Below, in pieces: positions 3,001 through 56,770 of a DNA stretch of 64,000 bases (the stretch's first letter is position 1; each line of letters starts with the position of its first letter). This DNA is from Mantamonas sphyraenae STR306. Taxonomy: Eukaryota > Protista > CRuMs. The stretch is taken from positions 62,001 through 126,000 of the forward strand of contig JAPMXV010000025.1 in NCBI GenBank assembly GCA_026936335.1, written 5' to 3'. The translations under genes and the position numbers were made by a program. The notes under the pieces were generated by a model. That model ran no database searches and was not told the DNA's origin. It worked only from the letters and a program-made list of their open reading frames with translations.

Positions 3001-3011
3001 CATGTCCACAT
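1..3011 (-). CDS. Secreted/cell-surface protein: signal peptide, FG-GAP (integrin-alpha-like) propeller repeats, two IPT/TIG-like domains, then further FG-GAP repeats; 3' end runs off the window
   Basis: Signal MLLLAAACIGVVSA; repeats RFGLAHSA..LVVGAS, FGKSVALG, FFGGSVSS..VVGS in ORFs 2463-3089 and 1940-2590 (joined by a 1-nt shift in a C6 run at ~2585). A long minus-strand frame from ~1500 towards 1 (not in the ORF track, spot-checked) encodes PDTVPQAGGATVTLYGARF and QGGSLVTVTGTGF (IPT-like) then further propeller repeats. GT-AG introns near 1905-1944 and ~1590-1668; joining into one gene is inferred. Confidence 0.62.
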
Positions 3012-3161
3012 GTGTGTGGATCGCTGCCTACTGTGAAGCACCTGCATGGATGGCTTTCCTTGAAATCCAGGAATGTTTTTTGTTGCCAAATCCGCGCAAT
3101 CTCTCTCGTTGTCACCTCCGCGCTTCCCACTCCACGATCAATTCCACTCAGGTCCCATCCA

Positions 3162-5078
<1,917 letters not shown>

Positions 5079-5104
5079 TTACCAAACACCCAGGCATCCG
5101 CAAC

Positions 5105-5952
5105 ATGCACCTGTCCCCCGCCATCAAAGCCAAGTTGGGTGCGGGAGGACGTGCTCGGAGCAACAGCAGTGCCAGTCAGGCATTGCGAAGAGGCTCCACG
5201 GCCTCCCACGCCTCACGCTTGTCTGGCCGCCGTGGATCCACTGCCTCTCGCGTTAGCAACAGCGGCGGTTCCGTCGTTTCCAACCTTCGACAGCATCATT
5301 CGTCAGGTTCCAGTGCATTGGGAGTGGATCACAGCAACTCGGGAGATGGTGCGTTGTCCCACCCCGTGCTCCGTTCAACCGCCGGCTTCATTCTCAACAC
5401 CGCCCCCCCCCAACCCGCTGTATGGCTCACACAATGCCCCATCATGATCACCTGGAACTCGTATGCACACAGATGGTCGTTCTGTCGGAGCTGGTTCCCA
5501 AATGACCGCAGGCTCGTCTTTGAGCAAGGCCGTGGGGCGATTTAAGAAGCAGTCCGTTTGAGACCGTTTGAGCGCGCGGGTCCCACCCACACCAGAGCTT
5601 CATCAGTCACTCACACACCATGGAAACACACACACACACACACACACACACATGCACACACACGTCCCCACCCCACATCCACCGAAATCTGCGTCTTTCG
5701 TCTTGGATCACCCACAGACGTTCAACGGGGTCAAGCGAACGCAAAGGCAGCGGCAGGGTAAGTTCAGGATCCGGGTATGGGGCCACAACACATGGACGAC
5801 TCACGAACAATCCATGGACCATTGCCACATGCACCACCTGTGCGTCGCACCCACCGATCCACAGGAGCTCATGGTTATGCAGCAGAAACTGGACAAGCTG
5901 GAAACGGAGAACGCGCGCTTGAAGCGTGTCGACGAGGTAGGGAACCACCGTG

Positions 5953-5994
<42 letters not shown>

Positions 5995-8830
5995 ACAGTC
6001 TCACACCTTCACACCTCATCCCCTGAGGGGTTTTTGCGTCGTGCCCACGCAGGAGTTGGCGATAATGCGCACGAAAGCAGAGGCGTTGGAGTCGGAACGA
6101 GACGACCTGTACGTGAAGATCTCCAACCTGAACAGCAACCACAACCGTCGCCTGGTGTCCTACCAGGAAGAGGTGCGTGAGTTGACCAACCAAAACCAGG
6201 ACATGCACTTCAAAGTGGAGCGCATCAACCAGGTGGAAAACGGCATCATCGAGTTCTTCCTGGATGTCAAGGATCGAAGTGCCGACCCTGAAAAGACCGA
6301 CTTTCGCCAGGAACGCGAGGAGTTGCGCAAACTCAACCCATTGGTGGTGCTGGATTATGCACGTGCCAACCTGTCCAACCTCATGGCATTCAAAGAGTCG
6401 TACGAGAACGAACTGCGCGGGGAGCTGGCACGGAAGAAGGACGAAAACGAAGAGACGATTGCCAAGCTGCGCAAGGAGAACCACGCAGTGAGCAAAACGG
6501 CGGTGGAGGCCAAGCAAAAGGCAGAGGTGTACCTGAAGCAGTTGCAGGAGATGGAATACTACAAGAACGAGATGATGCGGGAGTCGGAACAGGTGATTGG
6601 CGACCTGCAGCGTGACAACCAGGAGCTGATCAACCTGTTGCGTGAGAAGGAACAGACACTGAACAGCATGCACAGCGAGACGGAAAACAGGGATTCGTAC
6701 ATCAAACACCTGCAGCAGCGCAACCAGCAGATCAAGACACTGCAACAGCAGTTGGAAAACACACGCACGTTCCACACCTCGGAGATCCAGAAGCTAAAGG
6801 TGGCCCACGGGGTGGAATTGGACGAGATGAAGCGCAAATTGTCACGGATGAGCATGAGTGTGCACGCCAGGGACAAGCTGGAGGAGCGGTACAACGAGGC
6901 ACAGGACATCATTCGGCAGCTGAAGCAGAACACGTTCCAACAGAGTGTGGAGGCCATGGAGAAGCGCATGGAGCAGGCAGTGCGTGCGGAACATAGGCTA
7001 CGTGAGGAAGTGGCCACCTTGCAGGAGGCCAACAAGGCGCAGGAGAGGCAGTTGCACCAACTCAAGACAGTCAACGAACGGTTGCGTGCCAACGAAACAC
7101 AGGTGAATCGCATGCGCAAGCAGCTGATCAAGGACAGGGAGACCACGTACAAGGAGATGCTGCGTCGGGCGTGGGAGGATTCGCCAAGCATCCAAATCTA
7201 CAAAGACAAGCTGGCAGATAGGGAGCGTGAGATCGATTCGCTCAAGGAGAAGCTGCACCAGTATCTGTCGACGGAACAAGAAGAAGACGCAACTGGTGCG
7301 CAGGTATCAGTTGGAGCGTAAGGAGTACGAAGGCAAGATTGCGGCGTTGAAAGGCGAAGGTGGACCCGGGGCAGCTGCGGCCGCGGGGGCCATGCGACCC
7401 ATGAGCGCACGCGGACCGCGCATTCGTGTGGTGCACACCAACGCACGTCACAAGCGCAGAAGAAGCCCAGGCGACCACGCACGGCAGCAAGCACACGATC
7501 GACAGCAAGTGCCCCTGTGGCTGGGGAAAGCAGCAGCAGCATGAGTGGCGGTGGAGGAGGAGACCAGAGGGAACGACGTGTGACCATTGGCAGGGCACGA
7601 TCGAGGTCGATGGCAGACGAGGATGACGATGATGTGGATGAGGACGAGGATGGTGAGATGACGATGATGGGAGGCAGCAGTGGAGCAGGCGGAGAACGAC
7701 GAGAGGGCGAATCGTCCACGTCTGGGTCATGGTCGGCACCAGGCATGGCAGACAGTATGAGTGACAGTGAGGGAGACAGTGACGAGGACGACGACGAGGG
7801 CTTTGTCTCCCTGAACGAGTTGGATCAGGTGTACCAGCTGGAGAAGGAGAACGAACAGCTGACGGCGAGGATGCAACAGATGAACACCATGCGCAGTGCA
7901 GCCATGGGACTGGTGTCGTCGTACTCGCGTCTGGTGGACTCGACTGTGAGTGACAAGGAGTTGCGTGTGCCCACCGATCCCATCGAAGTGGCCACCAAGA
8001 TGGTGGAACTCAACACCCTCCTGTCTGCCCCCTCGTTTGGTCTGCGCCAACAGTTTACATACGACCGCAAGCGCAACCGGGGCAAGATTGAACAGAGCAC
8101 AAAGGAGTTTGCGCAGCTCGTGGGATCCGGAGGTGCAGCCGCGGCGTCCTTTGACACGGACAACAGCAACACCTCCGGCGATGGAGGACAAAGCAGCAGT
8201 GGCAGCAACAACAGCAACAACAGCAACAGCAGCAGCAACACATATAATAACAAGAGCAAGGAGGAGGGCAAGGACAGTCATTCGGTCCCTAGGGAGAAGG
8301 AACAGAGCAGCAGGGAAAGCGAGGAGGAAGACGCCGAGTCGCACGGCAACGGCAAAGGGCTGACAACACCTTCAGGCACACCAAAGACACGTCACATGCG
8401 TGCACTTGGTGCAGCAGCCATGGTGGGCATCCAGGGACGAGCCCGCGCTCGCAAGTCGCTGGCAGAATCGGGTCTGTCTGAAGGCGGCAGTGTGGATTTG
8501 AGCGAGGACAGCAGAGAGGTGGTGCGCCACGAGGTGGCCACACACAGTGACACCTACCAACGGTTCCGTGAAGAGAGCGGTGGTGCCAAAGGAGGCCCAC
8601 CCAAGAGCCCGCGGCCCGGATCGTCGGACGGAAGCCGACAGCAGCAGCAGCAGGCGCAGAAGCAGCAACAGGTGGAGGAGCATATGGATACAAAGATGGG
8701 CCACGGGGCATCTCGGTTTGAACTGGCCAAGCAGCGACACTTGGAGAGCACTGTGCCGATTCCGAGGCGCAATCGGGTGATGAACCGCGGCGGAACGATG
8801 AGCACGCTCAAGGTGGGCACCTTGCAATGA
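5105..8830 (+). CDS. Long coiled-coil protein with S/G/E-rich disordered termini, function unknown
   Basis: Heptad-rich ORFs (5777-7321, 7227-7544, 7517-8830), with (CA)n introns at ~5550-5720 and 5937-6052. Frame breaks at ~7273 and ~7440. Start codon and exon joins are uncertain. Confidence 0.55.
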
Positions 8831-43619: not shown

Positions 43620-44270
43620 ATGGCGTCGTCATCCAGCCACGAGATGGGCGAGGGGCACGTGCCCACATATTCGGACGAGGACCATTGGAAGCAGACTCAG
43701 GACGGGTACGGGGAGCCGCCGCACACGCACGACTACGGGGACATTCCCACGTACTCGGACCAGGACGCGTTTTACGGGGAACAGGACGACAACACGTACG
43801 TCACACCCGAGGGAGAGATTGTACAGCGGTTCGACAAGAAGCGCACCGAGGTGCCCAAGTTTGTGTTTATCCCAGACAAGACGCAGCCGCGGACCAACTG
43901 GCTGAACAGCATCACGGACAACAAATGCGGCCAGAGTCTGATCCTGGGCTCGACCATGGGCGCAGGGATCGGTCTGTCGATTGGGTTTGTGGGTGGCTTC
44001 CTTGCCGCACTGTTCTCTGGCCTTCCACGCTCAGAGATCCCTCGGTACACGGTGAAACGGGCGCTGCAGAGCGGCGGCTTCTTCACGTTTCTGCTGGCGA
44101 CTGCGTTTGGCCTGCGCTGTGACACTCTGCCACACAACACAGGCACGATCTATTCTCTGTACAACGGCGTCGGGGGTGGCGTTGTGTCACGTCATGATGT
44201 ACACACCAGTGTGTCAATTGTGACTTTGGAGGAGGAGGAGGAGGATTGGGAGGGGGAGGCGACGATGTGA
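43620..44270 (+). CDS. ROMO1: ROMO1/Mgr2-like TIM23-associated inner-membrane protein with acidic N-terminal extension
   Basis: CGQSLILGSTMGAGIGLSIGFVGG..LQSGGFFTFLLATAFGLRC matches the C..MG..G..G..QSGG.F..F..G.RC pattern. Confidence 0.8.
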   Translation: MASSSSHEMGEGHVPTYSDEDHWKQTQDGYGEPPHTHDYGDIPTYSDQDAFYGEQDDNTYVTPEGEIVQRFDKKRTEVPKFVFIPDKTQPRTNWLNSITDNKCGQSLILGSTMGAGIGLSIGFVGGFLAALFSGLPRSEIPRYTVKRALQSGGFFTFLLATAFGLRCDTLPHNTGTIYSLYNGVGGGVVSRHDVHTSVSIVTLEEEEEDWEGEATM

Positions 44271-44740
44271 TGATGATCAGGCGGGTGGTGGAGGGGGGGT
44301 GGGAGGGAGTGGGGAGGGAGGGGGGGGGTGTAGGGTGCACACAGGGAGTGGGGATGGGGTGGTGTGGTGTGGGAGGGTGGGATGGTAGGAGGACGGGGAG
44401 GATTTGGGTGGGAGAGGAGGGAAGTGGGTGGGGAAGGAGGGAGAGGGGCGAATGAATGGATGCTTGGGAATATGGTTGCGAGGTGAGTGGGGGCAGATTG
44501 TGCGGGGGGGGGCGTTGGAGGGAGGTGGGGAGGTGGATGCGTGGAGGGGTCCACCGGAACTTGGAAAGGAGACAAGGTTTGTTTTGGAGGGTGTGTGTGT
44601 GTGGGAACGGTGGTGGTGGTGGCGATGGATGGGTGGGGTGGAGTGAGGTGGGGAAGAGCGGGGGAGGGGTGGAAGGGGAAAGAGGGAAAGATGGGGGGAC
44701 ATCGGAGCGGGAGCTGACACGTGGGGCAGAACTGGTTGAT
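44271..44740 (+). other. Extremely G/purine-rich spacer upstream of the kinase (also 51822-52270)
   Basis: Dense GGG/GGGG tracts and almost no C on the + strand. Confidence 0.8.
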
Positions 44741-44745
44741 CGATC

Positions 44746-47700
44746 ATGAGCACAACACAACAAGTGGACTGGAAGACACTGCTGGCGAGTGGCGATGTGG
44801 AACGCATTGGGGTGGCATTGGCAGAGGCAGGAGAGGTGGGTTTGCGGGAGAGACGAGAGGGAAAATTGGTTGACGTGTGGGTGGAGAGGATGGTTGAGGA
44901 GTGAGGAAGGAGTGAATGGGGGCGATTGGGATTGGGTGGAAGTGGGTGGGTGGGTGGATGCGGGGGGTGATGGCTGACGCAGGTGGTGCAGGAATTGAAA
45001 CTCGGAGGGAAGAGTCTTGGGGACGAACGTGTGGCAGCCCTGGCAAAGGCATTGGGAAGGAACAGCAGCTTGAAGAAACTGTACCTCAACAACAACAGCA
45101 TCGGAGCAGAGGGAGCAGCAGCACTGGCGCAGGGACTGAGTGGGAACAGCAGCTTGCAGAACCTGAACATCAACAGCAACAGCATCGGGGACAAAGGAGC
45201 AGCAGCACTGGCGCAAGCACTGAGTGAGAACGGCAGTTTGCAGAGACTGGACCTCTACAACAACAGCATCGGGGCAGCAGGAGCAGCAGCACTGGGGCAG
45301 GCACTGAGTGGGAACAACAGCTTGCAGAGGCTGGACCTCAGCAGCAACAGCATCGGGGCAGAAGGAGCAGCAGCACTGGCGCAGGCATTGAGTGAGAACG
45401 GCAGCTTGCAGAACCTGAACATCAACTACAACAGCATCGGGACAGATGGAGCAGAAGCACTGGCACAGGCACTGAGTAAGAACAGCAGCTTGCAGACACT
45501 ATACCTCTACAACAACAGCATCGGAGCAGAAGGAGCAGCAGCACTGGCTCAGGTACTGAGTGAGAACAGCAGCTTGCAGACACTAAACCTCAACAACAAC
45601 AGCATCGGGGACAAAGGAGCAGCAGCACTGGCGCAGGCATTGAGTGAGAACGGCAGCTTGCAGAACCTGAACATCAACTACAACAGCATCGGGACAGATG
45701 GAGCAGAAGCACTGGCACAGGCACTGAGTAAGAACAGCAGCCTGCAGACACTGGACCTCAGCAACAACAGCATCGGAGCAGCAGGAGCAGCAGCACTGGC
45801 CGCAGTACTGGAATCCAACCACACCTGCTGGTACATGTCTGGTGTAGGCGATGATGCAGTCAAGCAGTTTCTCTCGCGCAACAAGGAGCACGCAGATGCG
45901 TTCCTCGCCGCCGCCCGCTCTGCCGACACCGCTGCCATGCAGGAGCAGCTGGATTGGGGTGTTCACGTCGATGCCTGGCCTGACGTCGAGAACACAGCCG
46001 TCACCGTTGCAGCCAACAACAACGACATTGAGCTGTGCGCATGGCTGATCGAGCGTGGTGCAAATCCACTCACTCGCCCATATGGCTACAAACCCAATGC
46101 CTTGGAGCTGGCCCAGAAAAACGGCAACACGGCCATCCTGGAGCTGCTCTCTGCAGCAATCAATCCTGTTGACCCATCCTGGCCAGCATACGCCACAGCA
46201 ACAGCCAATGTGGAGCTTGTGACTGAGCTGGATGCCATGCTGACAGCACTGTCATCATCATCGTCTGGACACACAAGCGTAGCGGATGTTGTGTCTGTGC
46301 TGAACGACAGCGCAAAGACGACACCGATGCGCGAGGCATCGTCTGTGCAGGAACACCTGGAGACAGTGCTTGCAGACACTGAGGTGGCATCGACACACCA
46401 TGCTGTGCTGGACACGGTGAAGGAAAGTGTGGACCAGGAAAACGCACGCGCACGCATACTCTTGGCTGCAGCTGCTCCACACGCTGCACAAGCACAGCAG
46501 ACACTGTGGACAGCAGAGCAGGAAGAAGTGGAAAGGCTGGTGGTGACACACAAGCAAGCGGCGAGACAGCGACAGGCAGGAACGACGATTGAAGCCAAGA
46601 CGAGTGCACGTGAAGTGGAACTGCAGACGAGTGTGGAGCTGGTGGGAGCGTGTGCACAACGGGCAGAGAAGAGGATGGCAGTGCGGAGGGAGGTGTATGG
46701 AGCAGCAGGAGAGGAGTGGGAGGGAGTGTGGAAGGAAGCAGCAGCGGGTGAACCATCGTCGTCACCTGGAGGATGGATTGCAGAACGGGCAGAGGCACAA
46801 CGGGAGCATGTGTTGGCACAGGCTGGGGTCACAAGGGAGGAGGGAAGACTGTATGCAGCTGGGCTGGAGCAACTGGAGGCCAACACAGGAGAGCTGGTGG
46901 CACGGAAGGAGGCACTGGGTGCAGAGGAGGAGGAGGTGCGGATGGCGAAGGAGATGCGTGTGATGGAGATGGAACGAGAGATTGAAGAGCTGGAGACCAG
47001 ACTGGCACAGCTGCGCAGGGACAAAGCAGCTGAAGAGGAAGCATTGCGTGAGCTGCCCGCTGTGTACAGACAAGAGTGCATGCAGATCGAAGCAACACTG
47101 AAACAATGTGAGAAGTGGCGCACACAGCTGCGGATGCTCTGTGAGCGTCAGGAGGGACTGACGCATGCGCTGGAGCAGCTGGCAGAGGCGAGCAAGGAGC
47201 ATCTGGAAGAAACCGCTGAAGCAGTGGACCACACGGAGCAACAGCTGCAGACACACCACAGAGCAGAACAGACGATGACCAAAGAGGCAGCCGAGTTGGC
47301 ATGTGGGTCGCTGGCAGGGGAACTTCAACGTCTGGAACGGTCGAAAGGACCGAAGCAGAAGCGTGTGCAGCAGGCAGAGGCAGACATGCTGCGGTACCTG
47401 GAGGAGGAGCTGACCGAAGAGTACAACCGTGCACGGGAGGAGCGGGAGCAGGCAGCAGCGGGTGTGAAGCAGGTGGAGGCGATGCAGACCGAGCGTCTGG
47501 ATACGCTGAATGCAGCCGAGGCACTGCTGGGCAAGGAGGCATCGAGTCTGGCGGCGGTGCTTGCAGGGGATGACAGACGAGGCTCATCGAACGGGTGGAC
47601 ACCTCCTGGGTCGCCACTGGGATCCGAGGTGGAGAGTAGCGGAGACGAGTCGCTGGAGATTCCGTGGTCGGATCTTTCGAAAGGGGAACTGCTGGGAGAG

Positions 47701-49020
47701 GGCGGATTTGCGTTTGTGTACAGGGGGATGCTGCGTGGAAGCACGCCAGTAGCCATCAAGATGATGAAGGTGCAGGTGATGGATGCTGAACACGCAGCAG
47801 CATTCAACCACGAGGTGCGGACGATGAAGGGACTGAAGCACCGGAACATGATCACACTGCACGGGGTGTGCATGGAACCGGAGCATGTGTGCATGGTGAC
47901 GGAACTGTGTGAGCTTGGGTCGCTGCACAAGCTGCTGCACGAGAGGGGCGAGGGTGCGGAAGGGCTGTCTGAGGAGGCCAAGGTGCAGATAGCACGAGAT
48001 GTGGCAGACGGAATGGCGTACCTGCACGGATACAAACCACCGATCATGCACAGGGACATGAAGCCAGAGAATGTGCTGCTGGACAGGCGTGGCGTGGCAC
48101 GGATCAGCGACTTTGGACTGAGCCGTGTCAAGGAGCACACCAAGACGAAAACCAAGTCAGGGGCCGGCTCATGGCAGTACATGGCACCTGAGCTGTTGTT
48201 GGATGATGATGACACGGACAGCGACGAGGAGGAGGATGCAGGGGCGTCGTCCTCGAGCGTTTCCATGCGGACGTTTGACGAAAAGGTGGATGTGTTTGCG
48301 TTTGGGATGCTGCTGTGGGAGATGATGCATGAAGTGCAGCCGTACAGCGGAAAGGGAGGCTTCTCGATGGCCAAGTTGATCTCCCGATGGGGCAAGAAGC
48401 CGGACAAGCGAGAGAAGATCGACACGAGCGTGTGTCCGGGATGGGCAACAAAGCTGATTGAGCAGTGCTGGGCGACGGATCCATCGCAACGGCCTCCATT
48501 CACACAGATTGTGGCGACGCTGGACACGGTGGAGGTGATGAAGAAGGAAGAGATGCACTCGCAGGTGGAGATTGTGAGCATCCTGCACGAGATGCAAGGG
48601 ACACAGGCACAGATTCTGGACGCGATGCAGTTTGACCACGAGGCATGGCAGGCACAGGTGGCTGCACTGGACCCGAGGGCACAGGAGGAGATTGTCACTG
48701 CGCTGCGAGAGGTACAGAGCGACACGGAATCACTGAAGAGAAAGAGTGGCCAACAGAGCAAGGCGATCCGGTTCCTGGGAGAGCAGGTGCCACAGATGCG
48801 AGCATGGCTGACAGAGGTGCAGACACGGGCAGAGGCACAAGGGCTGAACGCAGCCGATGTGGACATTGTGCGTGCGCAACTGGCTGCAATGGAGCAGGAT
48901 GTGATGGAGGTGAAAGAGCGAGTGAGCAGTCAAGGAGCAGCTATGGTGGGAGTGCAAGCGAAGCTGGTGACGGTGGAGATTGGGATGGGTGAGAGTGGAG
49001 AGGATGATGAAGGAATGTAG
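44746..49020 (+). CDS. Intracellular LRR - ankyrin - coiled coil - TKL protein kinase - coiled coil, copy 1 (9 full LRRs)
   Basis: Exon 1 MSTTQQVDWKTLLASGDVERIGVALAEAGE; phase-0 intron 44836-44982 (GTGGGT..CTGACGCAG); RI-like 28-aa LRRs; ankyrin repeats (TAVTVAA..WLIERGANP, NALELA..NGNTAILELL); kinase GEGGFAFVY, VAIK, HRDMKPEN, DFG, YMAPE, DVFAFG. No signal peptide or TM helix seen. Confidence 0.93.
45061..45816 (+). repeat. Array of nine 84-bp LRR-coding units
   Basis: Units start every 84 nt (45061, 45145 ... 45733) with consensus AACNNCAGCTTGCAGANNCTGNNCCTCNNCNNCAACAGCATCGG..GGAGCAGCAGCACTG. Confidence 0.97.
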
Positions 49021-49415
49021 AGCGATGAAGGAAGGAGTCGGCTGTAGAGGACCATGTCTGACACGATGTGGAACGAGTGAACGAGTGTACGCACAAGGAC
49101 TGGGTGATTGCAGGGAGGACAGGGGATCCCAACCCACGAGCAGGGTGCAACGGAAGCATGTTGAACGAGAACTGGAGGCAGCAGCAATTGATTCTACCCA
49201 ACATGGAAGAAACACGAGCAAACAAGGCAGCGTGTCCCTTCAACACATCCATCCCAACCTCTTTGCGGACACCACCAACCACCCAACACAACTCCTCAAC
49301 GACTGGGAACGGGGGTCTCTCCATTCGACTCTCACGTCATCACAAATCCCACACACACCAACCCCCAATCCTTGCCAGTCTTGTGTACCATCCACCTCAT
49401 CCACTCATCCACTCA

Positions 49416-51326
49416 TCACCTCCCTTGCGCATCCAAACCAAACGTCACCGGCGACGCCAACGTAACCACGCCATGGCGCATAAACGTACCATCGCGCAGG
49501 TCCAGGGCGCCCAGCATCTTCACAGAGCCCAGAACCTCCCACGTGCCACTGAGCAGCGTCAATGTACCCACTTCCATGGATCCATGGACACGCAGAGTAC
49601 CGCCCTGGCCGATGTGTACGGCATCGAAGCGAGCGCCAGTGTTGTGGACGCGCACTTCGCCACCCTGGGCCACGACGAGGTCATCCAGGACGGCGTTGCT
49701 GAGCCACGTCACTGTGGACGACGCCACACGCAGACGCAGACGCGACGTCTGTCCCTCCACGTGCCATGCACCCACCGTCTGGAGCGGGTCCTGTGCCGAC
49801 GGGTTGCCCCGCAGTGCACCGTGCTGCATGACTGTCATCTTGCTGTTCATCGTAGCGACACCATCCAATGTCACATTGGCTCCTGCCATCACACGCAGCT
49901 CGCATGCACCCGCGGTGCCGTTGACCGAGCCGTACAGCGAGGCCTCGCCGTAGAAGGACACGGTGGCGTTGCTGTCACACAACAGGTTGTGCACAGCCAT
50001 GGAGCCAAAGGCATGCACATGGCTGCTCACACGGGCCTGGGACAGCGTGTGCATCGAGCCGCCGAGGTCGGCGCCTGTCAGCGTCGTCACACCGTTTCCA
50101 CGCAGCCATGCGTTGGATGCCATGTCCAGCACACCCGTCACCTGCACGTCGGTGTTCACCTGAAGCACACCGCCCGCAGGCACGCGTGCATTCAGCACCT
50201 GTGTGCTCACGCCGACGCTCAACACGCCGTTGTTGCTTGTCAGGATGTTCACCACACGCAGCTGCGTCGTGTTTCCGCTCACTCCACCGCCTTCCGACAG
50301 TGTCACTGTGTTCATCCACAGTTGTGGGTCCTGCGCAACACCAGTGAACGCACCCTGCACCACGCTGCCTGTGCCGTGCACGTGTGTGTCGCCTGCGAGA
50401 GCTGCGCCACGCACGATCTCCAGCACGCTTCCTGACAGCACGGTGACGTTGCCCCAGGCAAGCGCACGGTCCACGCGTGCCACTGTGGCCTGCGAAAGCA
50501 CCACCGAGGCATTTGCGGGAACCAGCACACTGTCTGTGGCGTTGGGCACACGTCCGGCATCCCAGTTGGCGCTGACGTTCCAGTCGCCGCCGGCTGCGCC
50601 CACAAAGGTCAGCGTGGGCACAAACGGCGCCACGGTGACGTTGAGCACCGCCTGGCGCGAGTAGGCCGGTCCAGCGCCGTGGTTGCCCAGGTCGTAGACA
50701 CTCACCACGAGGGGATCGACACCCGAGGACAGACCAGGGACGCTTGCGTAGCGCAGGGTGGCCAGCTGGGCGTTGATGGAGCCGAGAGTGCCCACCACAT
50801 CGATCTGCAGCTTGTCTGGATGCGACACCGTCGACAGGCGTCCATGGGTGGCACTGACGACCAAACGCATGTTGCCATCGACCTGTGCGGCATCCACATC
50901 CGTCACAGAGATGCCTGCCACGTGCACACTGTCCAAATAGTCCACAGTGAGCTCTGTGGGCATGCCAACAATGTGCACGGGGTCGTTCACGGCGGTGACG
51001 TTGACAGTGAGCACAAACACGGCCTGGGTGGCAGGGCCACCGGTGAAGCCGTTGTCGTTCACCACCACTGTCACGGTGTCGCCACCCACGTGATGCACAG
51101 GAGCATGGTACACGAGTGTTGTCAGCAGCGCGTTGATCTGCGTCAGCGTGCCATTGTTCACCACCACGGATCCGTTGGCCGCGGCACCGGCTGCCAGCTC
51201 CACCGTGCCCAGCGTGGCACTCACGTTGAGGGTGAGCACACCAGCCGCGGCATCGGGGTCTGCCACGCGCATAAAGGGCACGTGGAAGCTGCTGCCCTGG
51301 GCGTGGGTGAACCAGATGCCCTTGAT
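49416..51326 (-). pseudogene. Internal fragment of a large adhesin-like surface protein (cadherin-like/Ig repeats plus beta-helix-like region), 5'-truncated
   Basis: Repeats VADPD..VNDNGFTGG..VTAVNDP and VTDVD..VYDLGNHG; GDWNVSANW..VP motif. The adhesin-like frame runs into the duplication junction at 51326 with no signal peptide. Confidence 0.65.
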
Positions 51327-51821
51327 GGGGAACAGGACGACAACACGTACGTCACACCCGAGGGAGAGATTGTACAGCGGTTCGACAAGAAGCGCACCGA
51401 GGTGCCCAAGTTTGTGTTTATCCCAGACAAGACGCAGCCGCGGACCAACTGGCTGAACAGCATCACGGACAACAAATGCGGCCAGAGTCTGATCCTGGGC
51501 TCGACCATGGGCGCAGGGATCGGTCTGTCGATTGGGTTTGTGGGTGGCTTCCTTGCCGCACTGTTCTCTGGCCTTCCACGCTCAGAGATCCCTCGGTACA
51601 CGGTGAAACGGGCGCTGCAGAGCGGCGGCTTCTTCACGTTTCTGCTGGCGACTGCGTTTGGCCTGCGCTGTGACACTCTGCCACACAACACAGGCACGAT
51701 CTATTCTCTGTACAACGGCGTCGGGGGTGGCGTTGTGTCACGTCATGATGTACACACCACTGTGTCGATTGTGACTTTGGAGGAGGAGGAGGAGGATTGG
51801 GAGGGGGAGGCGACGATGTGA
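51327..51821 (+). pseudogene. 5'-truncated ROMO1-like duplicate
   Basis: Near-identical to 43776-44270 but lacks the first 52 codons and the promoter. Confidence 0.8.
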
Positions 51822-52274
51822 TGATGATCAGGCGGGTGGTGGAGGGGGGTGCATGGGCGTGTAGGGTGCACACAGGGTGGGAGTGGGGTGGAGTGGTGGG
51901 GGAAGGGTGGGATGTTGGGAGGATGGGGAGGATTCGGGTGGGAGAGGAGGGAAGTGGGTGGGGAAGGAGGGAGAGGGGCGAATGAATGGATGCTTGGGAA
52001 TATGGTTGCGAGGTGGGTGGGGGCAGATTGGAGGGGGGGGTGGTTGGAGGGAGGTGGGGAGGTGGATGCGTGGAGGGGACCACCAGAACTTGGAAAGGAG
52101 ACAAGGTTTGTATTGAGGGGGTGTGTGTGGGAACGGTAGTGGTGGTGGTGGCGATGGATGGGGTGGGGTGGAGTGAGGTGGGGAAGAGCGGGGAAGGGGT
52201 GGAAGGGGAAAGAGGAAAAGAAGAGGGTAATCGGAGCGGGAGCTGACACGTGGGGCAGAACTGGTTGATTGATC

Positions 52275-55200
52275 ATGAGCACAACACAAAAAGTGGATTG
52301 GGAGGCACTGCTGGCGAGTGGCGATGTGGAACGCATTGGGGTGGCATTGGCAGAGGCAGGAGAGGTGGGTTTGCGGGAGAGACGAGAGGGAAAATTGGTT
52401 GACGTGTGGGTGGAGAGGATGGTTGAGGAGTGAGGAAGGAGTGAATGGGGGCGATTGGGATTGGGTGGAAGTGGGTGGGTGGGTGGATGCGGGGGGTGAT
52501 GGCTGACGCAGGTGGTGCAGAAATTGAAACTCGGAGGGAAGAGTCTTGGGGACGAACGTGTGGCAGCCCTGGCAAAGGCATTGGGAAGGAACAGCAGCTT
52601 GAAGAGGCTGGAACTCAACAGCAACAGCATCGGGGCAGAAGGAGCAGCAGCACTGGGGCAGGCACTGAGTGGGAACAGCAGCTTGCAGATACTGAGCCTC
52701 GACAACAACAGCATCGGGGCAGCAGGAGCAGCAGCACTGGGGCAGGCACTGAGTGGGAACAACAGCTTGCAGAGACTGTACCTCTACAACAACAGCATCG
52801 GGGACAAAGGAGCAGCAGCACTGGCGCAGGCACTGAGTAAGAACGGCAGCTTGCAGAACCTGAACATCAACTACAACAGCATCGGGACACATGGAGCAGA
52901 AGCACTGGCACAGGCACTGAGTAAGAACAGCAGCTTGCAGACACTGGACATCCGCAACAACAGCATCGGGGCAGCAGGAGCAGCAGCACTGGCGCAGGAA
53001 CTGAATGAGAATGGCAACTTGCAGTCGCTGTACCTTGACAACAACAGCATCGGGGACGAAGGAGCAGCAGCACTGGCGCACGCACTGAGTGAGAACAGCA
53101 GCTTGCAGAGACTGGACCTTGACAAGAACGGCATCGGAGCAGAAGGAGCAGCAGCATTGGCACACGCACTGAGTGCGAACAGCAGTTTGCAGAGACTGTA
53201 CCTCAGCAGCAACGCCATCGGGGCAGAGGGAGCAGAAGCACTGGCCGCAGCACTGGAGTCCAACCACACCTGCTGGTACATGCCTGGTGTACACGATGAT
53301 GCAGTCAAGCAGAGTCTCTCTCGCAACAAGGAGCACGCAGATGCGTTCCTCACCGCCGCCCGCTCTGCCGACACCGATGCCATGCAGGAGCAGCTGGATT
53401 GGGGTGTTCACGTCGACACATGGCCTGACAATGCCAACACAGCCCTCACCATTGCAGTCAACAGCAACGACATTGAACTGTGCGCGTGGCTGATCGGACG
53501 TGGTGCGAATCCACTCACGCGCCCTTGGGGCACCAAACCCAATGCCCTGGAGCTGGCCCAGAAGAATGGCAACACGGCCATCCTGGACCTGCTCTCTGCA
53601 GCATCCAAGCATGTTGACCGTTCCTGGCCAGCGTACGCCACAGCAACAGCCAATGCGGAGTTTGTGACTGAGCTGGATGCCATGCTGACAGCGTTGTCAT
53701 CACCATCGTCTGGACACACGAGCGTAGCGGATGTTGTGTCTGTGCTGAATGACAGCGCACAGACGACACCGATGCGCGAGGTATCGTCTGTGCATGCACA
53801 CCTGGAGACAGTGCTTGCAGACACTGAGGTGGCATCGACACACCATGCTGTGCTGGACACGGTGAAGGAGAATGCGCACCAGGAGAACGCACGCGCACGC
53901 ACACTCTTGGCTGCAGCTGCTCCACACGCTGCACAAGCACAGCAGACACGGTGGACAGCAGAGCAGGAAGAAGTGGAGAGGCTGGTGGCGACACACAAGC
54001 AAGCGGCGAGACAGCGACAGGCAGGGACGACGATGGAAGCCAAGACGAGTGCACGTGAAGTGGAACTGCAGACGAGTGTGGAGCTGGTGGGAGCGTGTGC
54101 ACAACGGGCAAAGAAGAGGATGGCAATGCGGAGGGAGGTGTATGGAGCAGCAGGAGGGGAGTGGGAGGGAGTGTGGAAGGAAGCAGCAGCAGGTGAACCA
54201 TCGTCGTCACCTGGAGGATGGATTGCAGAACGGGCAGAGGCACAACGGGAGCAGGTGTTGGCACAGGCTGGTGTCACAAGGGAGGAGGGAAGACGGTATG
54301 CAGCCGGGCTGGAGCAACTGGAGGCCAACACAGGCGAGCTGGAGGCACGGAAGGAGGCACTGGGTGCAGAGGAGGAGGAGGTGCGGATGGCGAAGGAGAC
54401 GCATGTGACAGAGATGGGACGAGAGATTGAAGAGCTGGAGACCAGACTGGCACAGCTGCGCAGGGACAAGGCTGCTGCGGAGGAAGCATTGCGTAAGCTG
54501 CCCGCTACGTACAGAAAAGAGCGCAAGCAGATCGAAGCAACACTGAATCAATGTGGGAAATGGCGCACACAGTTGCGCATGCTGTGTGAGCGTCAGGAGG
54601 GACTGACGCATGCGCTGGAGCAGCTGGCAGAGGCGAGCAAGGAGCATCTGGAAGAAACCGCTGAAGCAGTGGACCACACGGAGCAACAGCTGCAGACACA
54701 CCACAGAGCAGAACTGACGATGACCAAAGAGGCAGCCGAGTTGGCATGTGGGTCGCTGGCAGGGGAACTTCAACGTCTGGAACGGTCGAAAGGACCGAAG
54801 CAGAAGCGTGTGCAGCAGGCAGAGGCAGACATGCTGCGGTACCTGGAGGAGGAGCTGACCGAAGAGTACAACCGTGCACGGGAGGAGCGGGAGCAGGCAG
54901 CAGCGGGTGTAAAGCAGGTGGAGGCGATGCAGACCGAGCGGCTGGAAACGCTGAATGCAGCCGAGGCACTGCTGGGCAAGGAGGCATCGAGTCTGGCGGC
55001 GGTGCTTGCAGGGGAGGACAGACGAGGGTCATCGAACAACTGGACACCGCCTGGGTCGCCACTGGGATCAGAGGTGGAGAGTAGCGGAGACGAGTCGCTG
55101 GAGATTCCGTGGTCGGATCTGTCGAAAGGGGAACTGCTGGGCGAGGGCGGGTTTGCGTTTGTGTACAAGGGGATGCTGCGTGGAAGCACGCCAGTAGCCA

Positions 55201-56462
55201 TCAAGATGATGAAGGTACAGGTGATGGATGCCGAACACACAGCAGCATTCAACCACGAGGTGCGGACGATGAAGGGACTGAAGCACAGGAACATGATCAC
55301 ACTGCACGGGGTGTGCGTCGAACCGGAGCATGTGTGCATGGTGACGGAACTGTGTGAGCTTGGGTCGCTGCACAAACTGCTGCACGAGAGGGGCGAGAGT
55401 GCGGAAGGGCTGTCTGAGGAGGCCAAGGTGCAGATTGCACGGGATGTGGCAGACGGGATGGCATACCTGCACGGATACAAACCACCGATCATGCACAGGG
55501 ACCTGAAGCCAGAGAATGTGCTGCTGGACAGGCGTGGCGTGGCACGGATCAGCGACTTTGGGCTGAGCCGGGTAAAGGAGCACACCAAGACGAAAACCAA
55601 GTCAGGGGCCGGTTCATGGCAGTACATGGCACCTGAGCTGTTGTTGGATGATGATGACACGGACAGCGACGAGGAGGATGATGCAGGGGCATCCTCGAGC
55701 GTTTCCATGCGGACGTTTGACGAAAAGGTGGATGTGTTTGCGTTTGGGATGCTGTTGTGGGAGATGATGCATGAAGTGCAGCCGTACAGCGGAAAGGGAG
55801 GCTTCTCGATGGCCAAGTTGATCAAACGCTGGGTACAGAAGCCGGACAAGCGAGAGAAGATCGACACGAGCGTGTGTCCGGGATGGGCGACAAAGCTGAT
55901 TGAGCAGTGCTGGGCGACGGATCCATCGCAACGGCCTCCATTCACACAGATTGTAGCGACGCTAGACACGGTGGAGGTGATGAAGAAGGAAGAGATGCAC
56001 TCGCAGGTGGAGATTGTGAGCATCCTGCACGAGATGCAAGGGACACAGGCACAGATCCTGGACGCGATGCAGTTTGACCACGAGGCATGGCAGGCACAGG
56101 TGGCTGCACTGGACCCCAGGGCACAGGAGGAGATTGTCACTGCGCTGAAGCAGGTACAGAGCGACACGGAATCACTAAAGAGGAGGAGTGGCCAACAGAG
56201 CAAGGCGATCCGGTTCCTGGAAGAGCAGGTACCACAGTTGCGGACATGGCTGACAGAGGTGCAGACACGGGCAGAAGCACAAGGGCTGAACGCAGCAGAT
56301 GTGGACATTGTGCGTGCGCAACTGGCTGCCATGGAGCAGGATGTGATGGAAGTGAAAGAGCGGGTGAGCAGTCAAGGAGCAGCGATGGTGGGAATGCAAG
56401 CGAAGCTTGTGACGGTGGAGATTGGGATGGGGGAGAGTGGAGAGGATGATGAAGGAGTGTGA
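52275..56462 (+). CDS. Intracellular LRR - ankyrin - coiled coil - TKL protein kinase - coiled coil, copy 2 (8 full LRRs)
   Basis: Exon 1 MSTTQKVDWEALLASG.., intron 52365-52511, intact 1316-codon ORF; HRDLKPEN, DFG and APE intact. Confidence 0.93.
52590..53261 (+). repeat. Array of eight 84-bp LRR-coding units
   Basis: Units at 52590, 52674 ... 53178; same scaffold as the copy 1 array. Confidence 0.97.
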
Positions 56463-56770
56463 AGCCATGAAGGAAGGAGTCGGCTGTAGAGGACCACGTC
56501 CACTTTGCTTTGCACACATGCCACTGGTTGGACTAGATGACACGATGTGGAACGACGTGTGTGTGCCCTTGTCCAATTTCAGCGGGCTTGGGCCGACGAG
56601 TGGTTTCGCGGCGAACAGCCGCATCGGCCAATCAGCGGTCACATCGACTGGAGAGCATAATCAAGCGGACAAACAATCTCTGGGAAGCATGGGAAAACCG
56701 TTCATATGGGCTGAACACCCATGTTAGGCGAGTTTAAGAGGGAAAGTCCCCAACACAAATTCCCACCCGG

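What the first reader, a model, noticed from the sequence alone, without database searches (positions are those of the whole stretch)
44746..56462. Paralogous intracellular LRR-ankyrin-TKL kinases with hypervariable LRR faces: candidate diversified immune/sensor receptor system
Seen: two tandem genes share a near-identical kinase and coiled coils but differ in LRR number (9 vs 8). The exposed x positions of xLxLxxN also differ. Copy 1 has KLYLNNN, NLNINSN, RLDLYNN, RLDLSSN, NLNINYN, TLYLYNN, TLNLNNN, NLNINYN, TLDLSNN. Copy 2 has RLELNSN, ILSLDNN, RLYLYNN, NLNINYN, TLDIRNN, SLYLDNN, RLDLDKN, RLYLSSN. The helical scaffold (GAAALAQALS) stays almost fixed. Known: these x positions form the concave ligand-binding face of LRR solenoids, and similar patterns mark lamprey VLRs, plant NLRs and brown-algal ROCO LRRs. 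Inference: this is a cytosolic variable-sensor/constant-kinase receptor family with no NACHT, NB-ARC or ROC switch. I do not recognise this architecture as a described family.
Basis: partly seen in the sequence, partly recalled or inferred. Interest (0 to 1): 0.88.

Follow-up and report, generated by a model that had tools for sequence, protein, structure and literature searches.

The report
Variable-LRR ankyrin kinase gene family
Two neighbouring genes of the deep-branching marine protist Mantamonas sphyraenae belong to a family, so far seen only in this genome, of at least a dozen soluble kinases whose leucine-rich-repeat end changes fast (repeat number, and four surface residues per repeat) while the kinase end is conserved, which is the evolutionary signature of a recognition receptor, although what it recognises is unknown.

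Summary
Window 44746-49020 and 52275-56462 hold two tandem two-exon genes, 88% identical in protein. There is no signal peptide, transmembrane segment, P-loop, NACHT, NB-ARC or Roc.

The genome is Mantamonas sphyraenae (CRuMs). It holds at least 11 close LRR-bearing paralogues with 3-20 LRR units, plus an Hsp70-headed one. The same LRR-ankyrin module also occurs with a U-box, with other tails, or alone. At least 310 copies of the 84-bp unit are scattered over the genome.

Kinase dN/dS is 0.06-0.26. Beta-strand codons 3, 5, 7 and 8 of the unit have pN about twice pS, other x positions about 0.85, and scaffold positions 0.28. Identical units are shared between loci and duplicated within arrays.

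No orthologue was found in public protein collections. An immune or non-self sensing role is inference only. The closest evolutionary analogue is the Podospora NWD/HET-E repeat family.

First readers of this scan noted the same family on other DNA of this genome (s1-590317, s1-596551, s1-582078, s1-590357).

The parts
43776..49058 (+). Duplicated segment 1: about 1 kb of upstream DNA plus gene copy 1. It matches 51327-56500.
   Evidence: blastn of the window on itself gives 91-94% identity. The same upstream homology is seen at copies B2-B4.
44746..44835 (+). Copy 1 (A1), exon 1: 30 codons, hydrophilic, no signal peptide.
   Evidence: ATG at 44746 and GT donor at 44836. Contigs of run X4 join 44835 to 44992.
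44836..44991 (+). Copy 1 intron, 156 nt, GT..AG, G-rich.
   Evidence: Joint 'skips 156, GT..AG (cut +2)' in 2 contigs of X4. Depth over it is zero or near zero in X3/X4 while X1/X2 cover it. Sequence read.
44992..49020 (+). Copy 1 exon 2, ending at the stop codon 49018-49020.
   Evidence: Open frame 44983-49020.
44986..45825 (+). Copy 1 LRR array: 10 in-phase units of 84 nt (28 aa), RI/NLRC type. The first is a degenerate cap unit.
   Evidence: Phase and units. Pfam LRR_6 at 3.9e-39. AF2 horseshoe with pLDDT 89.5. Foldseek hits RI, NOD2 and NLRP3.
45814..46173 (+). Copy 1 LRR C-terminal cap (SNHTCWYM, one extra beta strand) plus 2-3 ankyrin repeats.
   Evidence: AF2 strand 280-282 and helices 287-389. 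Ank_2 is weak here (20.8 bits) but above the cut-off in relatives. The exhaustive search hits only ankyrin-repeat proteins. dN/dS is 0.4-1.0.
46174..47652 (+). Copy 1 linker and long helical (coiled-coil-like) region CC1.
   Evidence: No Pfam family. AF2 predicts helices up to 146 residues, at low confidence. dN/dS is 0.3-0.5.
47653..48534 (+). Copy 1 TKL protein kinase domain with all catalytic motifs and a 25-aa acidic/serine insert after APE.
   Evidence: PK_Tyr_Ser-Thr at 7e-55. Nearest solved chains are CTR1 (1.4e-51), ZAK, MLK, BRAF and TAK1. GxGxxG, VAIK, HRD, DFG and APE are invariant in 10 paralogues. dN/dS is 0.06-0.26.
48535..49017 (+). Copy 1 C-terminal helical tail CC2.
   Evidence: No Pfam family. 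Helices in AF2, low confidence. dN/dS is 0.03-0.17. A CC2-like tail also occurs in kinase-less relatives L018 and L021.
51327..56500 (+). Duplicated segment 2: upstream DNA plus gene copy 2.
52275..52364 (+). Copy 2 (A2), exon 1. Boundaries are set by homology to copy 1.
   Evidence: Translation matches copy 1 except 3 of the first 30 residues. The splice itself was not seen in reads.
52365..52520 (+). Copy 2 intron, by homology, 156 nt.
   Evidence: Same spacing ATG to ORF start as copy 1, 237 nt.
52521..56462 (+). Copy 2 exon 2, ending at the stop codon.
   Evidence: Open frame 52512-56462.
52515..53270 (+). Copy 2 LRR array: 9 units of 84 nt.
   Evidence: LRR_6 at 7.7e-36.
53259..53618 (+). 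Copy 2 LRR cap plus ankyrin repeats.
   Evidence: Homology to copy 1. Ank_2 and Ank_4 are weak.
55095..56012 (+). Copy 2 TKL kinase domain.
   Evidence: Own-genome search places it at C25:117095-118012, 97% identical to copy 1. PK_Tyr_Ser-Thr at 8e-56.

Best explanation
These are two members of a gene family, found so far only in Mantamonas sphyraenae, that encodes soluble (cytosolic) modular kinases. Each protein has an N-terminal RI/NLRC-type LRR horseshoe, an LRR cap with 2-3 ankyrin repeats, a long helical linker, a MAP3K-like TKL kinase and a helical tail.

Shown. The family has at least 11 close LRR-bearing members with 3-20 LRR units. The units are 84-bp cassettes drawn from a genome-wide pool of at least 310 near-identical copies. 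They are duplicated within arrays and exchanged between loci (concerted evolution). Against that homogenised background, the four beta-strand codons facing the concave surface (unit positions 3, 5, 7, 8) accumulate amino-acid changes about twice as fast as synonymous changes. The kinase and the tail are under purifying selection.

Inferred. The LRR face is a ligand-recognition surface kept diverse by selection, so each paralogue recognises a different partner, most plausibly a non-self protein from bacteria, viruses or other cells met by this bacterivorous flagellate. Ligand binding would relieve an autoinhibited state or cluster the helical regions, so that the kinase autophosphorylates and starts a MAPK-type cascade. 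No nucleotide-binding switch is involved. The family is one output branch of a larger LRR-ankyrin 'sensor module' superfamily, which also carries U-box and other tails.
For: Architecture: Pfam LRR_6, Ank and PK_Tyr_Ser-Thr. AF2 model of the LRR-cap-ankyrin part has pLDDT 89.5 and pTM 0.85. Its fold matches RI, NOD2 and NLRP3. The LRRs are 50-56% identical to coral NLRC3-like LRRs. The kinase is nearest to CTR1, ZAK, MLK, BRAF and TAK1, and its catalytic motifs are invariant.

Soluble, no switch: no TM segment (highest 19-residue hydropathy 1.11), no P-loop, and no NACHT, NB-ARC or Roc.

Family: 12 kinases at 85-100% identity on contigs C25, C2, C9, C34 and C58, plus more distant ones. LRR counts range from 3 to 20.

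Selection: dN/dS is 0.06-0.26 in the kinase, 0.03-0.17 in CC2, 0.3-0.5 in CC1 and 0.4-1.0 in cap+ankyrin. For unit codons 3, 5, 7, 8, pN/pS(all codons) is 2.30 in the C25 cluster (bootstrap 1.94-2.78) and 1.66 in the C2 cluster (1.37-2.16). On a minimum spanning tree of 67 distinct units it is 2.11 (Fisher p = 1e-12), against 0.88 and 0.83 for the other x positions and 0.28 for the scaffold. Third bases of codons 5, 7, 8 are C in 131 of 138 cases and never T, whereas the same two-fold codons are only 62-79% C-ending in the rest of these genes.

The DSSP strand covers unit positions 3-7, so 3, 5 and 7 alternate with the core leucines; that alternate strand residues face the concave surface is the known geometry of LRRs, the model's coordinates were not inspected.

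Exchange of units: identical units are shared by A1 and B3 and duplicated within A1 and B2. The A1-B3 cap+ankyrin tract has zero differences while flanking parts have dS 0.06-0.16. Unit identity is the same within genes and between genes, 0.838. At least 310 unit copies lie on 20 or more contigs, including non-kinase genes.

Transcription and splicing: a GT..AG joint appears in X4 contigs, and X3/X4 lack the intron.

Module reuse: LRR-Ank with a U-box (L020), with CC2-like tails (L018, L021), or standing alone (L019, L022, L024). Hsp70-Ank-kinase in L008.
Against: There is no functional, expression-response, ligand or population data of any kind.

The selection test compares paralogous repeat units, not orthologous sites. 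If the denominator is the synonymous rate of the four codons themselves (inflated by codon 3), the ratio falls to about 1.2. In the older, non-homogenised array of gene D the ratio is 0.82.

Other x positions evolve near neutrality. The cap+ankyrin part also evolves fast, which could indicate generally relaxed constraint on the N-terminal half.

Coiled-coil formation and dimerisation are not demonstrated: the AF2 model of the C-terminal half is poor (pLDDT 45).

Which paralogue is transcribed cannot be told from the contigs, and runs X3/X4 are only guessed to be RNA.
Confidence: 0.55

Rival explanations
1. Ordinary signalling kinases. The LRR-ankyrin end is a generic protein-protein interaction scaffold for endogenous partners. 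The variation is a by-product of repeat instability (unequal crossing-over, conversion) and relaxed constraint after very recent tandem duplication, with no role in non-self recognition.
For: LRR-TKL and ankyrin-TKL fusions are common in protist kinomes: 16 LRR-TKLs and an ankyrin-TKL in Phytophthora (PMC3019232). LRR_6 plus kinase occurs in other eukaryotes. The paralogues are young, with dS 0.05-0.3. Non-beta x positions have a ratio of about 0.85 and cap+ankyrin up to about 1. The ratio drops to about 1.2 with the class-own synonymous denominator.
Against: pN at codons 3, 5, 7, 8 exceeds the synonymous rate of the interleaved leucine codons 4 and 6 (0.09-0.13) and of four-fold sites about twofold. 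It also exceeds the other unconstrained x positions 2.5-fold. Relaxed constraint alone cannot push the ratio above 1. Third bases of the variable codons are frozen while first and second bases changed repeatedly. The kinase and the tail are clearly constrained.
Confidence: 0.25
2. Self/non-self (allorecognition, mating or kin discrimination) receptors rather than pathogen or prey sensors. The diversity would serve to distinguish conspecific cells, as in the fungal HET-E/HET-D NWD family.
For: The mode of evolution is the same as in Podospora het-d/het-e: a family of about 10 genes, concerted evolution of repeats within and between loci, variable repeat number, and four surface codons under positive selection (PMC1805685; compare).
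Against: The proteins are predicted to be cytosolic, and cell fusion or sex is not documented for Mantamonas (my knowledge, not tested). Nothing in the data separates this reading from pathogen sensing.
Confidence: 0.1
3. Programmed hypermutation. The variable codons would be diversified by a targeted mechanism, either DGR-like adenine mutagenesis or VLR-like somatic cassette assembly, and not by germline mutation plus selection.
For: Variable codons 5, 7, 8 are mostly AAC, GAC, TAC or AGC with an invariant third C. Units behave as cassettes.
Against: Variation is not confined to adenines. Codons 3, 13, 14 and 25 vary at G and C positions, and the AAC codons 9 and 26 never change their adenines. 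All variants are fixed in the germline assembly as separate paralogues. Joints seen inside the LRR region in Logan contigs are what graph tangles among 310 or more units would give, and they are not evidence of rearrangement. No reverse transcriptase or template repeat was looked for near the loci.
Confidence: 0.03
4. Assembly artefact: unmerged haplotypes or a collapsed or expanded repeat.
For: The organism is diploid and was assembled with FALCON.
Against: Both copies lie in tandem on one primary contig with distinct spacers. They are 6-7% divergent in DNA. There are 10 more copies at four other loci. Genomic runs X1 and X2 cover all bins.
Confidence: 0.01

Closest known systems
Podospora anserina NWD / HET-E / HET-D family (fungal STAND/NLR-like proteins with highly internally conserved WD repeats; PMC1805685)
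   Same: Gene family of about 10 members. The repeats are nearly identical in DNA and are exchanged within and between loci. Repeat number is variable. Exactly four codons per repeat, on the interaction surface, are under diversifying selection. The proteins are cytosolic.
   Different: The repeat type is WD40 rather than LRR. The fungal proteins have a NACHT NTPase and a HET death domain. Here there is no NTPase and the output is a TKL kinase. RIP does not apply.
Animal NLRC3/NOD2-type NLRs (RI-like LRR sensors)
   Same: The LRR units are of the same 28-residue RI/NLRC type, 50-56% identical to coral NLRC3-like LRRs. The fold matches NOD2, NLRP3 and RI. Both are cytosolic.
   Different: There is no NACHT domain and no CARD, PYD or other death-fold domain. 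The LRR is N-terminal rather than C-terminal. The output is a covalently attached kinase rather than an oligomerisation-driven adaptor.
LRRK2 / ROCO kinases, including brown-algal LRR-ROCOs with shuffled LRR exons (PMC11378527)
   Same: Cytosolic proteins combining ankyrin repeats, LRRs and a TKL-group kinase. The brown-algal ROCO LRRs are candidate immune receptors diversified by exon shuffling.
   Different: There is no Roc GTPase or COR domain and no P-loop. The LRRs are RI-type rather than typical-type. The order is LRR then ankyrin. The LRR units here are not separate exons; the whole array lies in one exon.
Plant Raf-like MAP3Ks (CTR1/EDR1) and animal MLK/ZAK/DLK MAP3Ks
   Same: The closest kinase domains among solved structures: CTR1 at 1.4e-51, ZAK/MLK at about 1e-33. 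MLK, ZAK and DLK also use helical zipper regions next to the kinase (my knowledge).
   Different: The N-terminal regulatory regions are unrelated and lack LRRs. These are not multigene variable families.
LRR_6 plus kinase proteins of environmental eukaryotes and Mesostigma (P0361, P0362, P0382, P0399, P0445)
   Same: RI-type LRR array together with PK_Tyr_Ser-Thr in one protein; the LRR is N-terminal in the metagenome proteins.
   Different: The P0382 kinase is only 26% identical, and a hydrophobic segment lies between its LRR and kinase, so it looks like a receptor kinase. There is no ankyrin module and no homologous helical region. In the Mesostigma protein the kinase precedes the LRR.

Membership tests
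TKL-group protein kinase (MAP3K-like) | Match to the Tyr/Ser-Thr kinase profile above the curated cut-off | tested here: met
   PF07714 scores 186.5 and 189.6 bits against a cut-off of 23.1.
TKL-group protein kinase (MAP3K-like) | Catalytic motifs intact (GxGxxG, VAIK Lys, HRDxKxxN, DFG, APE) | tested here: met
   All are present and invariant in 10 paralogues. Copy 1 has HRDM where copy 2 has HRDL.
TKL-group protein kinase (MAP3K-like) | Nearest characterised kinases belong to the TKL group | tested here: met
   CTR1, ZAK, MLK1/4, BRAF, TAK1 and DLK head the list of solved chains. No kinome-wide tree was built.
RI-like / NLRC-type LRR (Pfam LRR_6) | 28-residue unit LxxLxLxxNxIGxxGAxxLAxAL, profile match, and alpha/beta horseshoe fold | tested here: met
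   Strict 28-residue phase. LRR_6 at 130 bits. AF2 horseshoe. Foldseek hits RI, NOD2 and NLRP3 at E 1e-16.
Ankyrin repeat | Profile match at or above the cut-off, and helix-turn-helix repeats | tested here: met
   Below the cut-off in the two window genes (20.8 and 19.1 against 27.3). Above it in family members L008 (30.3), L012 (28.4) and L018 (36.7). The exhaustive search returns multi-ankyrin proteins. Paired helices in the AF2 model.
NLR / STAND receptors | Central NACHT or NB-ARC P-loop NTPase | tested here: not met
   No Pfam hit and no GxxxxGK[ST] motif. Weak NACHT and NB-ARC loci exist elsewhere in the genome but not in these genes.
ROCO / LRRK | Roc GTPase plus COR between LRR and kinase | tested here: not met
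   No Pfam family in 46237-47649, no P-loop, and the region is predicted all-helical.
LRR receptor kinase (RLK type) | Signal peptide and a transmembrane segment between LRR and kinase | tested here: not met
   Exon 1 is hydrophilic. The highest 19-residue Kyte-Doolittle mean is 1.11. No dedicated signal-peptide predictor was available.
Concertedly evolving hypervariable-repeat recognition families (NWD/HET-E type) | High internal DNA identity of repeats, and exchange of repeats within and between loci | tested here: met
   Unit identity is 0.838 both within and between genes. Identical units occur in A1 and B3 and within arrays. At least 310 units are spread genome-wide.
Concertedly evolving hypervariable-repeat recognition families (NWD/HET-E type) | Variable repeat number among members | tested here: met
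   3, 5, 7, 8, 9, 9, 9, 10, 12, 16 and 20 units.
Concertedly evolving hypervariable-repeat recognition families (NWD/HET-E type) | Positive selection at a few codons on the binding surface | tested here: met
   The ratio is 1.7-2.3 at codons 3, 5, 7, 8 by counting methods. Caveats: the comparison is between paralogous units, no likelihood site model was run, and the ratio is 1.2 with the class-own pS.
Diversity-generating retroelement target | Variation restricted to template adenines | tested here: not met
   G and C positions vary in codons 3, 13, 14 and 25. The adenines of codons 9 and 26 are invariant.
Diversity-generating retroelement target | Nearby reverse transcriptase and template repeat | not tested
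   No search for a reverse transcriptase near the loci was made.

The most novel reading that the evidence does not exclude
Mantamonas, a member of the deep-branching CRuMs lineage, has a switch-less cytosolic innate recognition system. An NLRC-type LRR-ankyrin sensor module is diversified by genome-wide cassette exchange plus positive selection on four concave-face residues per repeat. It is wired directly to alternative effectors: a MAP3K-like kinase, a U-box ligase, or other tails. The kinase-bearing tandem arrays would act as a repertoire of receptors for microbial or viral ligands. This would be an immune-receptor architecture evolved independently of NLRs, RLKs and ROCOs.
Probability: 0.3. 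Interest if true: 0.8.

Novelty: new variant of a known kind. Interest (0 to 1): 0.6.

Why it matters
If the LRR face really is a diversified recognition surface, this family would be a third way of building an intracellular LRR receptor: direct fusion to a MAP3K-like kinase with no nucleotide-binding switch. The other two are NLRs and ROCOs. It occurs in a lineage near the base of Amorphea for which nothing is known about defence or cell-cell recognition.

It would also extend the 'concerted evolution plus four hypervariable codons' mechanism, first described for fungal WD-repeat het genes, to LRRs in a distant eukaryote. That would suggest the mechanism is a general route to recognition repertoires.

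The family is compact and nearly intronless, with a constant kinase. That makes swap experiments (LRR array against kinase activity) and ligand fishing practical.

If the variation turns out to be neutral repeat instability, the locus is still a clean example of genome-wide LRR cassette homogenisation.

Tried and rejected
1. Orthologue searches. Searches with the non-LRR part, the whole protein and the cap+ankyrin module against 1.84 G representatives found only generic kinases, NLRC-like LRRs and generic ankyrin proteins. No orthologue appeared, not even from Mantamonas plastica. The length window and fragmentary transcriptomes mean this is not proof of absence.

2. Homodimer test of the C-terminal helical tail (complex prediction). 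No verdict (score 0.02, own fold uncertain). This is neither for nor against dimerisation.

3. AF2 of the C-terminal 932 residues with an alignment of near-identical paralogues. pLDDT is 45 and the kinase is not folded properly. Only the all-helical character of CC1 and CC2 is usable, and weakly.

4. Laying four public runs on copy 1 (4401 letters, within the operators' 6000 limit). Contigs are 120-640 nt fragments because of the paralogues, so allelic, strain or clonal variation of the arrays cannot be read. Joints inside the LRR region are treated as cross-paralogue tangles.

5. DGR-like adenine mutagenesis was rejected on the base pattern.

6. The haplotype artefact was rejected.

7. A hidden NTPase in the linker was rejected.

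8. Treating the metagenomic LRR_6-kinase proteins as relatives was rejected: the kinase is 26% identical and a TM-like segment is present.

9. Spliced model. Exon 2 was searched by reference only. The 30-residue exon 1 was not searched. The two exons were joined only inside a local hydropathy script.

Full report
**What is there.** The window is G000:C25:62001-126000 of a 25,061,354-base, 78-contig, roughly 59% GC eukaryotic assembly. Those figures are exactly those of the FALCON assembly of Mantamonas sphyraenae: 25.06 Mb, 78 contigs, GC 59.19% (PMC10492846). The ER Hsp90 of the genome finds its best match, at 76% identity, in Mantamonas plastica. I therefore take the organism to be M. sphyraenae, a bacterivorous marine flagellate of the CRuMs clade. 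The genome paper does not contain the words kinase, leucine or LRR.

**The two genes.**
- Frames 44983-49020 and 52512-56462 are open for 1345 and 1316 codons.
- Each is preceded, 237 nt upstream, by an ATG-initiated 30-codon exon.
- For copy 1 the splice is seen directly. Two contigs of run X4 join 44835 to 44992 and skip 156 nt with GT..AG ends. Runs X3 and X4 have essentially no depth over the intron, while X1 and X2 cover it.
- X3 and X4 have the short-contig profile of transcriptomes. Their label 'DNA?' is a guess of the tool, so I treat this as probable but not certain evidence of transcription and splicing of at least one family member.
- The two proteins are 88% identical, with one 28-residue gap.

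**Domain anatomy.**
- *LRR array.* Pfam gives LRR_6, the RI type. The array is strictly phased in 28-residue (84-nt) units: ten in copy 1 and nine in copy 2, counting a degenerate N-terminal cap unit.
- *Model of the N-terminal part.* An AlphaFold2 model of the LRR, cap and ankyrin part is confident (pLDDT 89.5, pTM 0.85). It shows a regular horseshoe, an eleventh short strand formed by the conserved SNHTCWY motif, and then paired helices. Its nearest solved folds are ribonuclease inhibitor, NOD2 (36% identity), NLRP3, axonemal LRR proteins and RanGAP. The closest LRR sequences in public data are coral NLRC3-like NACHT-LRR proteins, at 50-56% identity over the array.
- *Ankyrin module.* Pfam Ank_2 is below the cut-off in the window genes but above it in family members. 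An exhaustive search with this module returns only generic multi-ankyrin proteins at about 30-35% identity.
- *Linker (CC1) and tail (CC2).* The next roughly 490 residues and the last roughly 160 have no Pfam family. They are predicted as very long helices, but in a poor model (pLDDT 45). 'Coiled coil' is therefore plausible, not shown.
- *Kinase.* It has all catalytic motifs, and they are invariant in ten paralogues. It is closest to CTR1 (1.4e-51), then ZAK, MLK, BRAF, TAK1 and DLK. That makes it a TKL kinase of MAP3K type. A 25-residue acidic/serine insert follows APE.
- *What is absent.* There is no hydrophobic segment (highest 19-residue hydropathy 1.11), no P-loop, and no NACHT, NB-ARC or Roc. 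The proteins are predicted to be soluble and to lack a nucleotide switch.

**The family.**
- *Kinase-bearing members.* A six-frame search of the genome with the kinase finds twelve copies at 85-100% identity. Six lie on C25: the two of the window, plus four at 150-176 kb with a spacing of about 7.4 kb. Three lie on C2 and one each on C9, C34 and C58. More distant ones lie on C38 and C73. The LRR arrays of the close members have 3, 5, 7, 8, 9, 9, 9, 10, 12, 16 and 20 units.
- *Variants.* The C9 member has an Hsp70 in place of the LRR array. The C58 member lacks the long linker.
- *The module in other contexts.* The cap+ankyrin module is found at 90 or more places, which is a lower bound. It occurs with a U-box (L020), with CC2-like tails but no kinase (L018, L021), with another tail (L025), or as the end of short LRR proteins (L019, L022, L024). 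There is also a broken copy (L026).
- *The unit genome-wide.* One 84-nt unit of copy 1 has at least 310 matches of roughly 82-94% identity on 20 or more contigs, many in non-kinase genes. This explains the 10-40-fold excess depth over the LRR bins.

**How the arrays evolve.**
- *Homogenised units.* In the 46 canonical units of the six C25 genes the helix codons are almost invariant, even at synonymous sites (GGA GCA GCA GCA CTG). Variation is concentrated in the first and second bases of codons 3, 5, 7 and 8, and to a lesser degree in codons 13, 14, 21, 24, 25 and 27.
- *Concerted evolution.* Units are as similar between genes as within genes (0.838). Units of the C73 genes form their own, even more homogeneous pool (0.89-0.91). 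The array of the C34 gene is old and diverged (0.65) although its kinase is 91% identical.
- *Exchange and duplication.* Units 2, 3 and 9 of copy 1 are identical in DNA to units of copy B3, 57 kb away. The adjoining cap+ankyrin tract has no difference at all, whereas the rest of the two genes has dS 0.06-0.16. Within arrays, unit 5 equals unit 8 in copy 1, and unit 3 equals unit 6 in B2. So units are duplicated within arrays and exchanged between loci.

**Selection.**
- *Outside the array.* dN/dS is 0.06-0.26 in the kinase, 0.03-0.17 in the tail, 0.3-0.5 in the linker and 0.4-1.0 in cap+ankyrin. dS is 0.05-0.3. The genes are therefore functional and young.
- *All-pairs comparison of units.* I pooled codons by structural class and used the synonymous diversity of all codons of the unit as the yardstick.

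| Codon class | C25 cluster (all pairs) | C2 cluster (all pairs) | Spanning tree of 67 distinct units |
|---|---|---|---|
| Beta-strand x (3, 5, 7, 8) | 2.30 (bootstrap 1.94-2.78) | 1.66 (1.37-2.16) | 2.11 (Fisher p = 1e-12) |
| Loop x (13, 14) | 2.03 | 1.14 | 0.88 |
| Helix-end x (21, 24, 25, 27, 28) | 1.03 | 0.62 | 0.83 |
| Scaffold | 0.28 | 0.20 | 0.28 |

- *Diverged array.* In the C34 gene the beta-strand ratio is 0.82.
- *No local mutation excess.* The leucine codons 4 and 6, interleaved with the variable codons, have ordinary synonymous rates of 0.09-0.13.
- *Yardstick not depressed.* Non-coding DNA upstream of the two window copies differs by about 6%, which is not more than dS.
- *Frozen third bases.* Third bases of codons 5, 7 and 8 are C in 131 of 138 cases and never T. 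The same codon families are only 62-79% C-ending elsewhere in these genes. The units are too young for synonymous change, yet have changed repeatedly at the first two bases.
- *Where the codons sit.* DSSP on the model puts the strand at unit positions 3-7. Positions 3, 5 and 7 alternate with the core leucines, so by the known geometry of LRRs they should point to the concave face, with position 8 just beyond the strand. I did not inspect the model's coordinates, so this placement is inferred, not measured.
- *Caveats.* The comparison is between paralogous units, not orthologous sites. No likelihood site model could be run. With the synonymous rate of the four codons themselves, which is dominated by codon 3, the ratio is only about 1.2.
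- *Conclusion.* I consider diversifying selection, or selection maintaining diversity against homogenisation, well supported but not proven.

**Interpretation.**
- *Shown.* The architecture, the family, cassette turnover, purifying selection on the output half, and excess amino-acid change on the beta face.
- *Inferred.* The LRR face binds different ligands in different paralogues. The ligands are non-self. Binding controls the kinase by relief of autoinhibition or by clustering through the helical regions. The kinase feeds a MAPK-type cascade.
- *Rivals.* These are ordinary signalling scaffolds with unstable repeats, conspecific allorecognition, and programmed hypermutation. The last is disfavoured: variation is not adenine-specific and all variants are germline paralogues. 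A haplotype artefact is excluded.

**Comparison with what is known.**
- The kinase is a TKL member and the repeats are RI/NLRC-type LRRs; both memberships were tested and met.
- The proteins are not NLRs, ROCOs or receptor kinases. The defining NTPase, Roc-COR or TM features were tested and are absent.
- LRR-TKL fusions as such are common in protists. LRR_6 plus kinase proteins exist in metagenomes and in Mesostigma, but they are not homologous beyond the domains.
- The mode of evolution is that of the Podospora NWD/HET-E family: concerted evolution of repeats within and between about 10 loci, variable repeat number, and four surface codons under positive selection (PMC1805685).
- I therefore rate this as a new variant of a known kind. 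It combines a previously undescribed domain architecture with a known diversification mechanism, in a lineage where neither has been reported.

- Exon 2 was always used by reference. The joined exon1+exon2 protein was not sent to any search or folding tool; it was assembled only in a local hydropathy script.
- The dimer test gave no verdict and is not used as evidence.
- First readers of this scan noted the same family on other stretches of this genome. Their notes served as leads, and I checked them where stated.

Noticed in passing
L008 (G000:C9:148318-155635), ORF 3167-6865 +: A close paralogue of the kinase (95% identical) carries a complete Hsp70 (PF00012, 1.8e-169) at its N-terminus in place of the LRR array. 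The Hsp70 is followed by the ankyrin module and the kinase.
   Followed up: partly
L020 (G000:C76:94400-102700), ORF 1823-5020 -: The LRR_6-ankyrin module is fused to a U-box E3 ligase domain (PF04564, 36 bits) and further ankyrin repeats, with no kinase. L018 and L021 have the module with a CC2-like helical tail but no kinase. L025 has another tail.
   Followed up: partly
genome-wide; example unit window 45574-45657: There are at least 310 copies of the 84-bp LRR unit at roughly 82-94% identity on 20 or more contigs. Only 40 of 214 candidate regions were scored. Non-kinase genes hold units as similar to copy 1 as its own units are to each other.
   Followed up: partly
G000, low-coordinate ends of contigs C4, C5, C15, C17, C22, C25, C26, C29, C30, C31, C35, C41, C45, C60, C76: Many LRR-cap-ankyrin loci lie within 4-20 kb of contig starts: at least 16 of the 90 cap hits, where about 6 would be expected by length. 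Most contigs end in telomere repeats according to PMC10492846. The larger superfamily therefore looks enriched near chromosome ends. The kinase arrays themselves are internal.
   Followed up: no
window 45814-46173 versus L003 3662-4021: The cap+ankyrin tract and LRR units 2, 3 and 9 of copy 1 are identical in DNA to copy B3, 57 kb away. The rest of the two genes has dS 0.06-0.16. This is a recent gene-conversion or recombination tract.
   Followed up: yes
L009 (G000:C34:200583-207900): Gene D has a kinase 91% identical to copy 1, but its 16-unit LRR array has units only 65% identical to each other. Either the array escaped homogenisation or it was acquired from another pool.
   Followed up: partly
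L026 (G000:C34:195500-203800), about C34:199480-199875: A truncated LRR-cap-ankyrin copy with two in-frame stops (TGA, TAA) lies next to gene D. It is probably a pseudogene.
   Followed up: no
window 44700-49100, runs X3 and X4: Two runs labelled 'DNA?' behave like transcriptomes. They have short contigs, no depth over the intron, and one GT..AG spliced joint. X4 also shows a 3-nt deletion at 48247, which matches the one-codon difference in the acidic insert of other paralogues.
   Followed up: partly
window 49058-51327: The spacer between the two copies is not part of the duplicated segment. It differs from the DNA upstream of 43776. Another first-reader note describes gene fragments there. 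I did not examine it.
   Followed up: no
G000:C73:130-147 kb (L012-L014): This is a second, more distant tandem trio of LRR-ankyrin-kinases without the long linker. Its own unit type (NQIGDEGAAALGTGLAQNST) is extremely homogeneous, at 89-91% DNA identity.
   Followed up: partly
G000, about 20 loci (e.g. C5:279432-280037, C73:155028-155498): Weak NB-ARC and NACHT-like STAND NTPase matches exist in the genome (best 48.7 and 40.7 bits). None lies in the kinase genes. Whether any carries the same LRR units was not checked.
   Followed up: no
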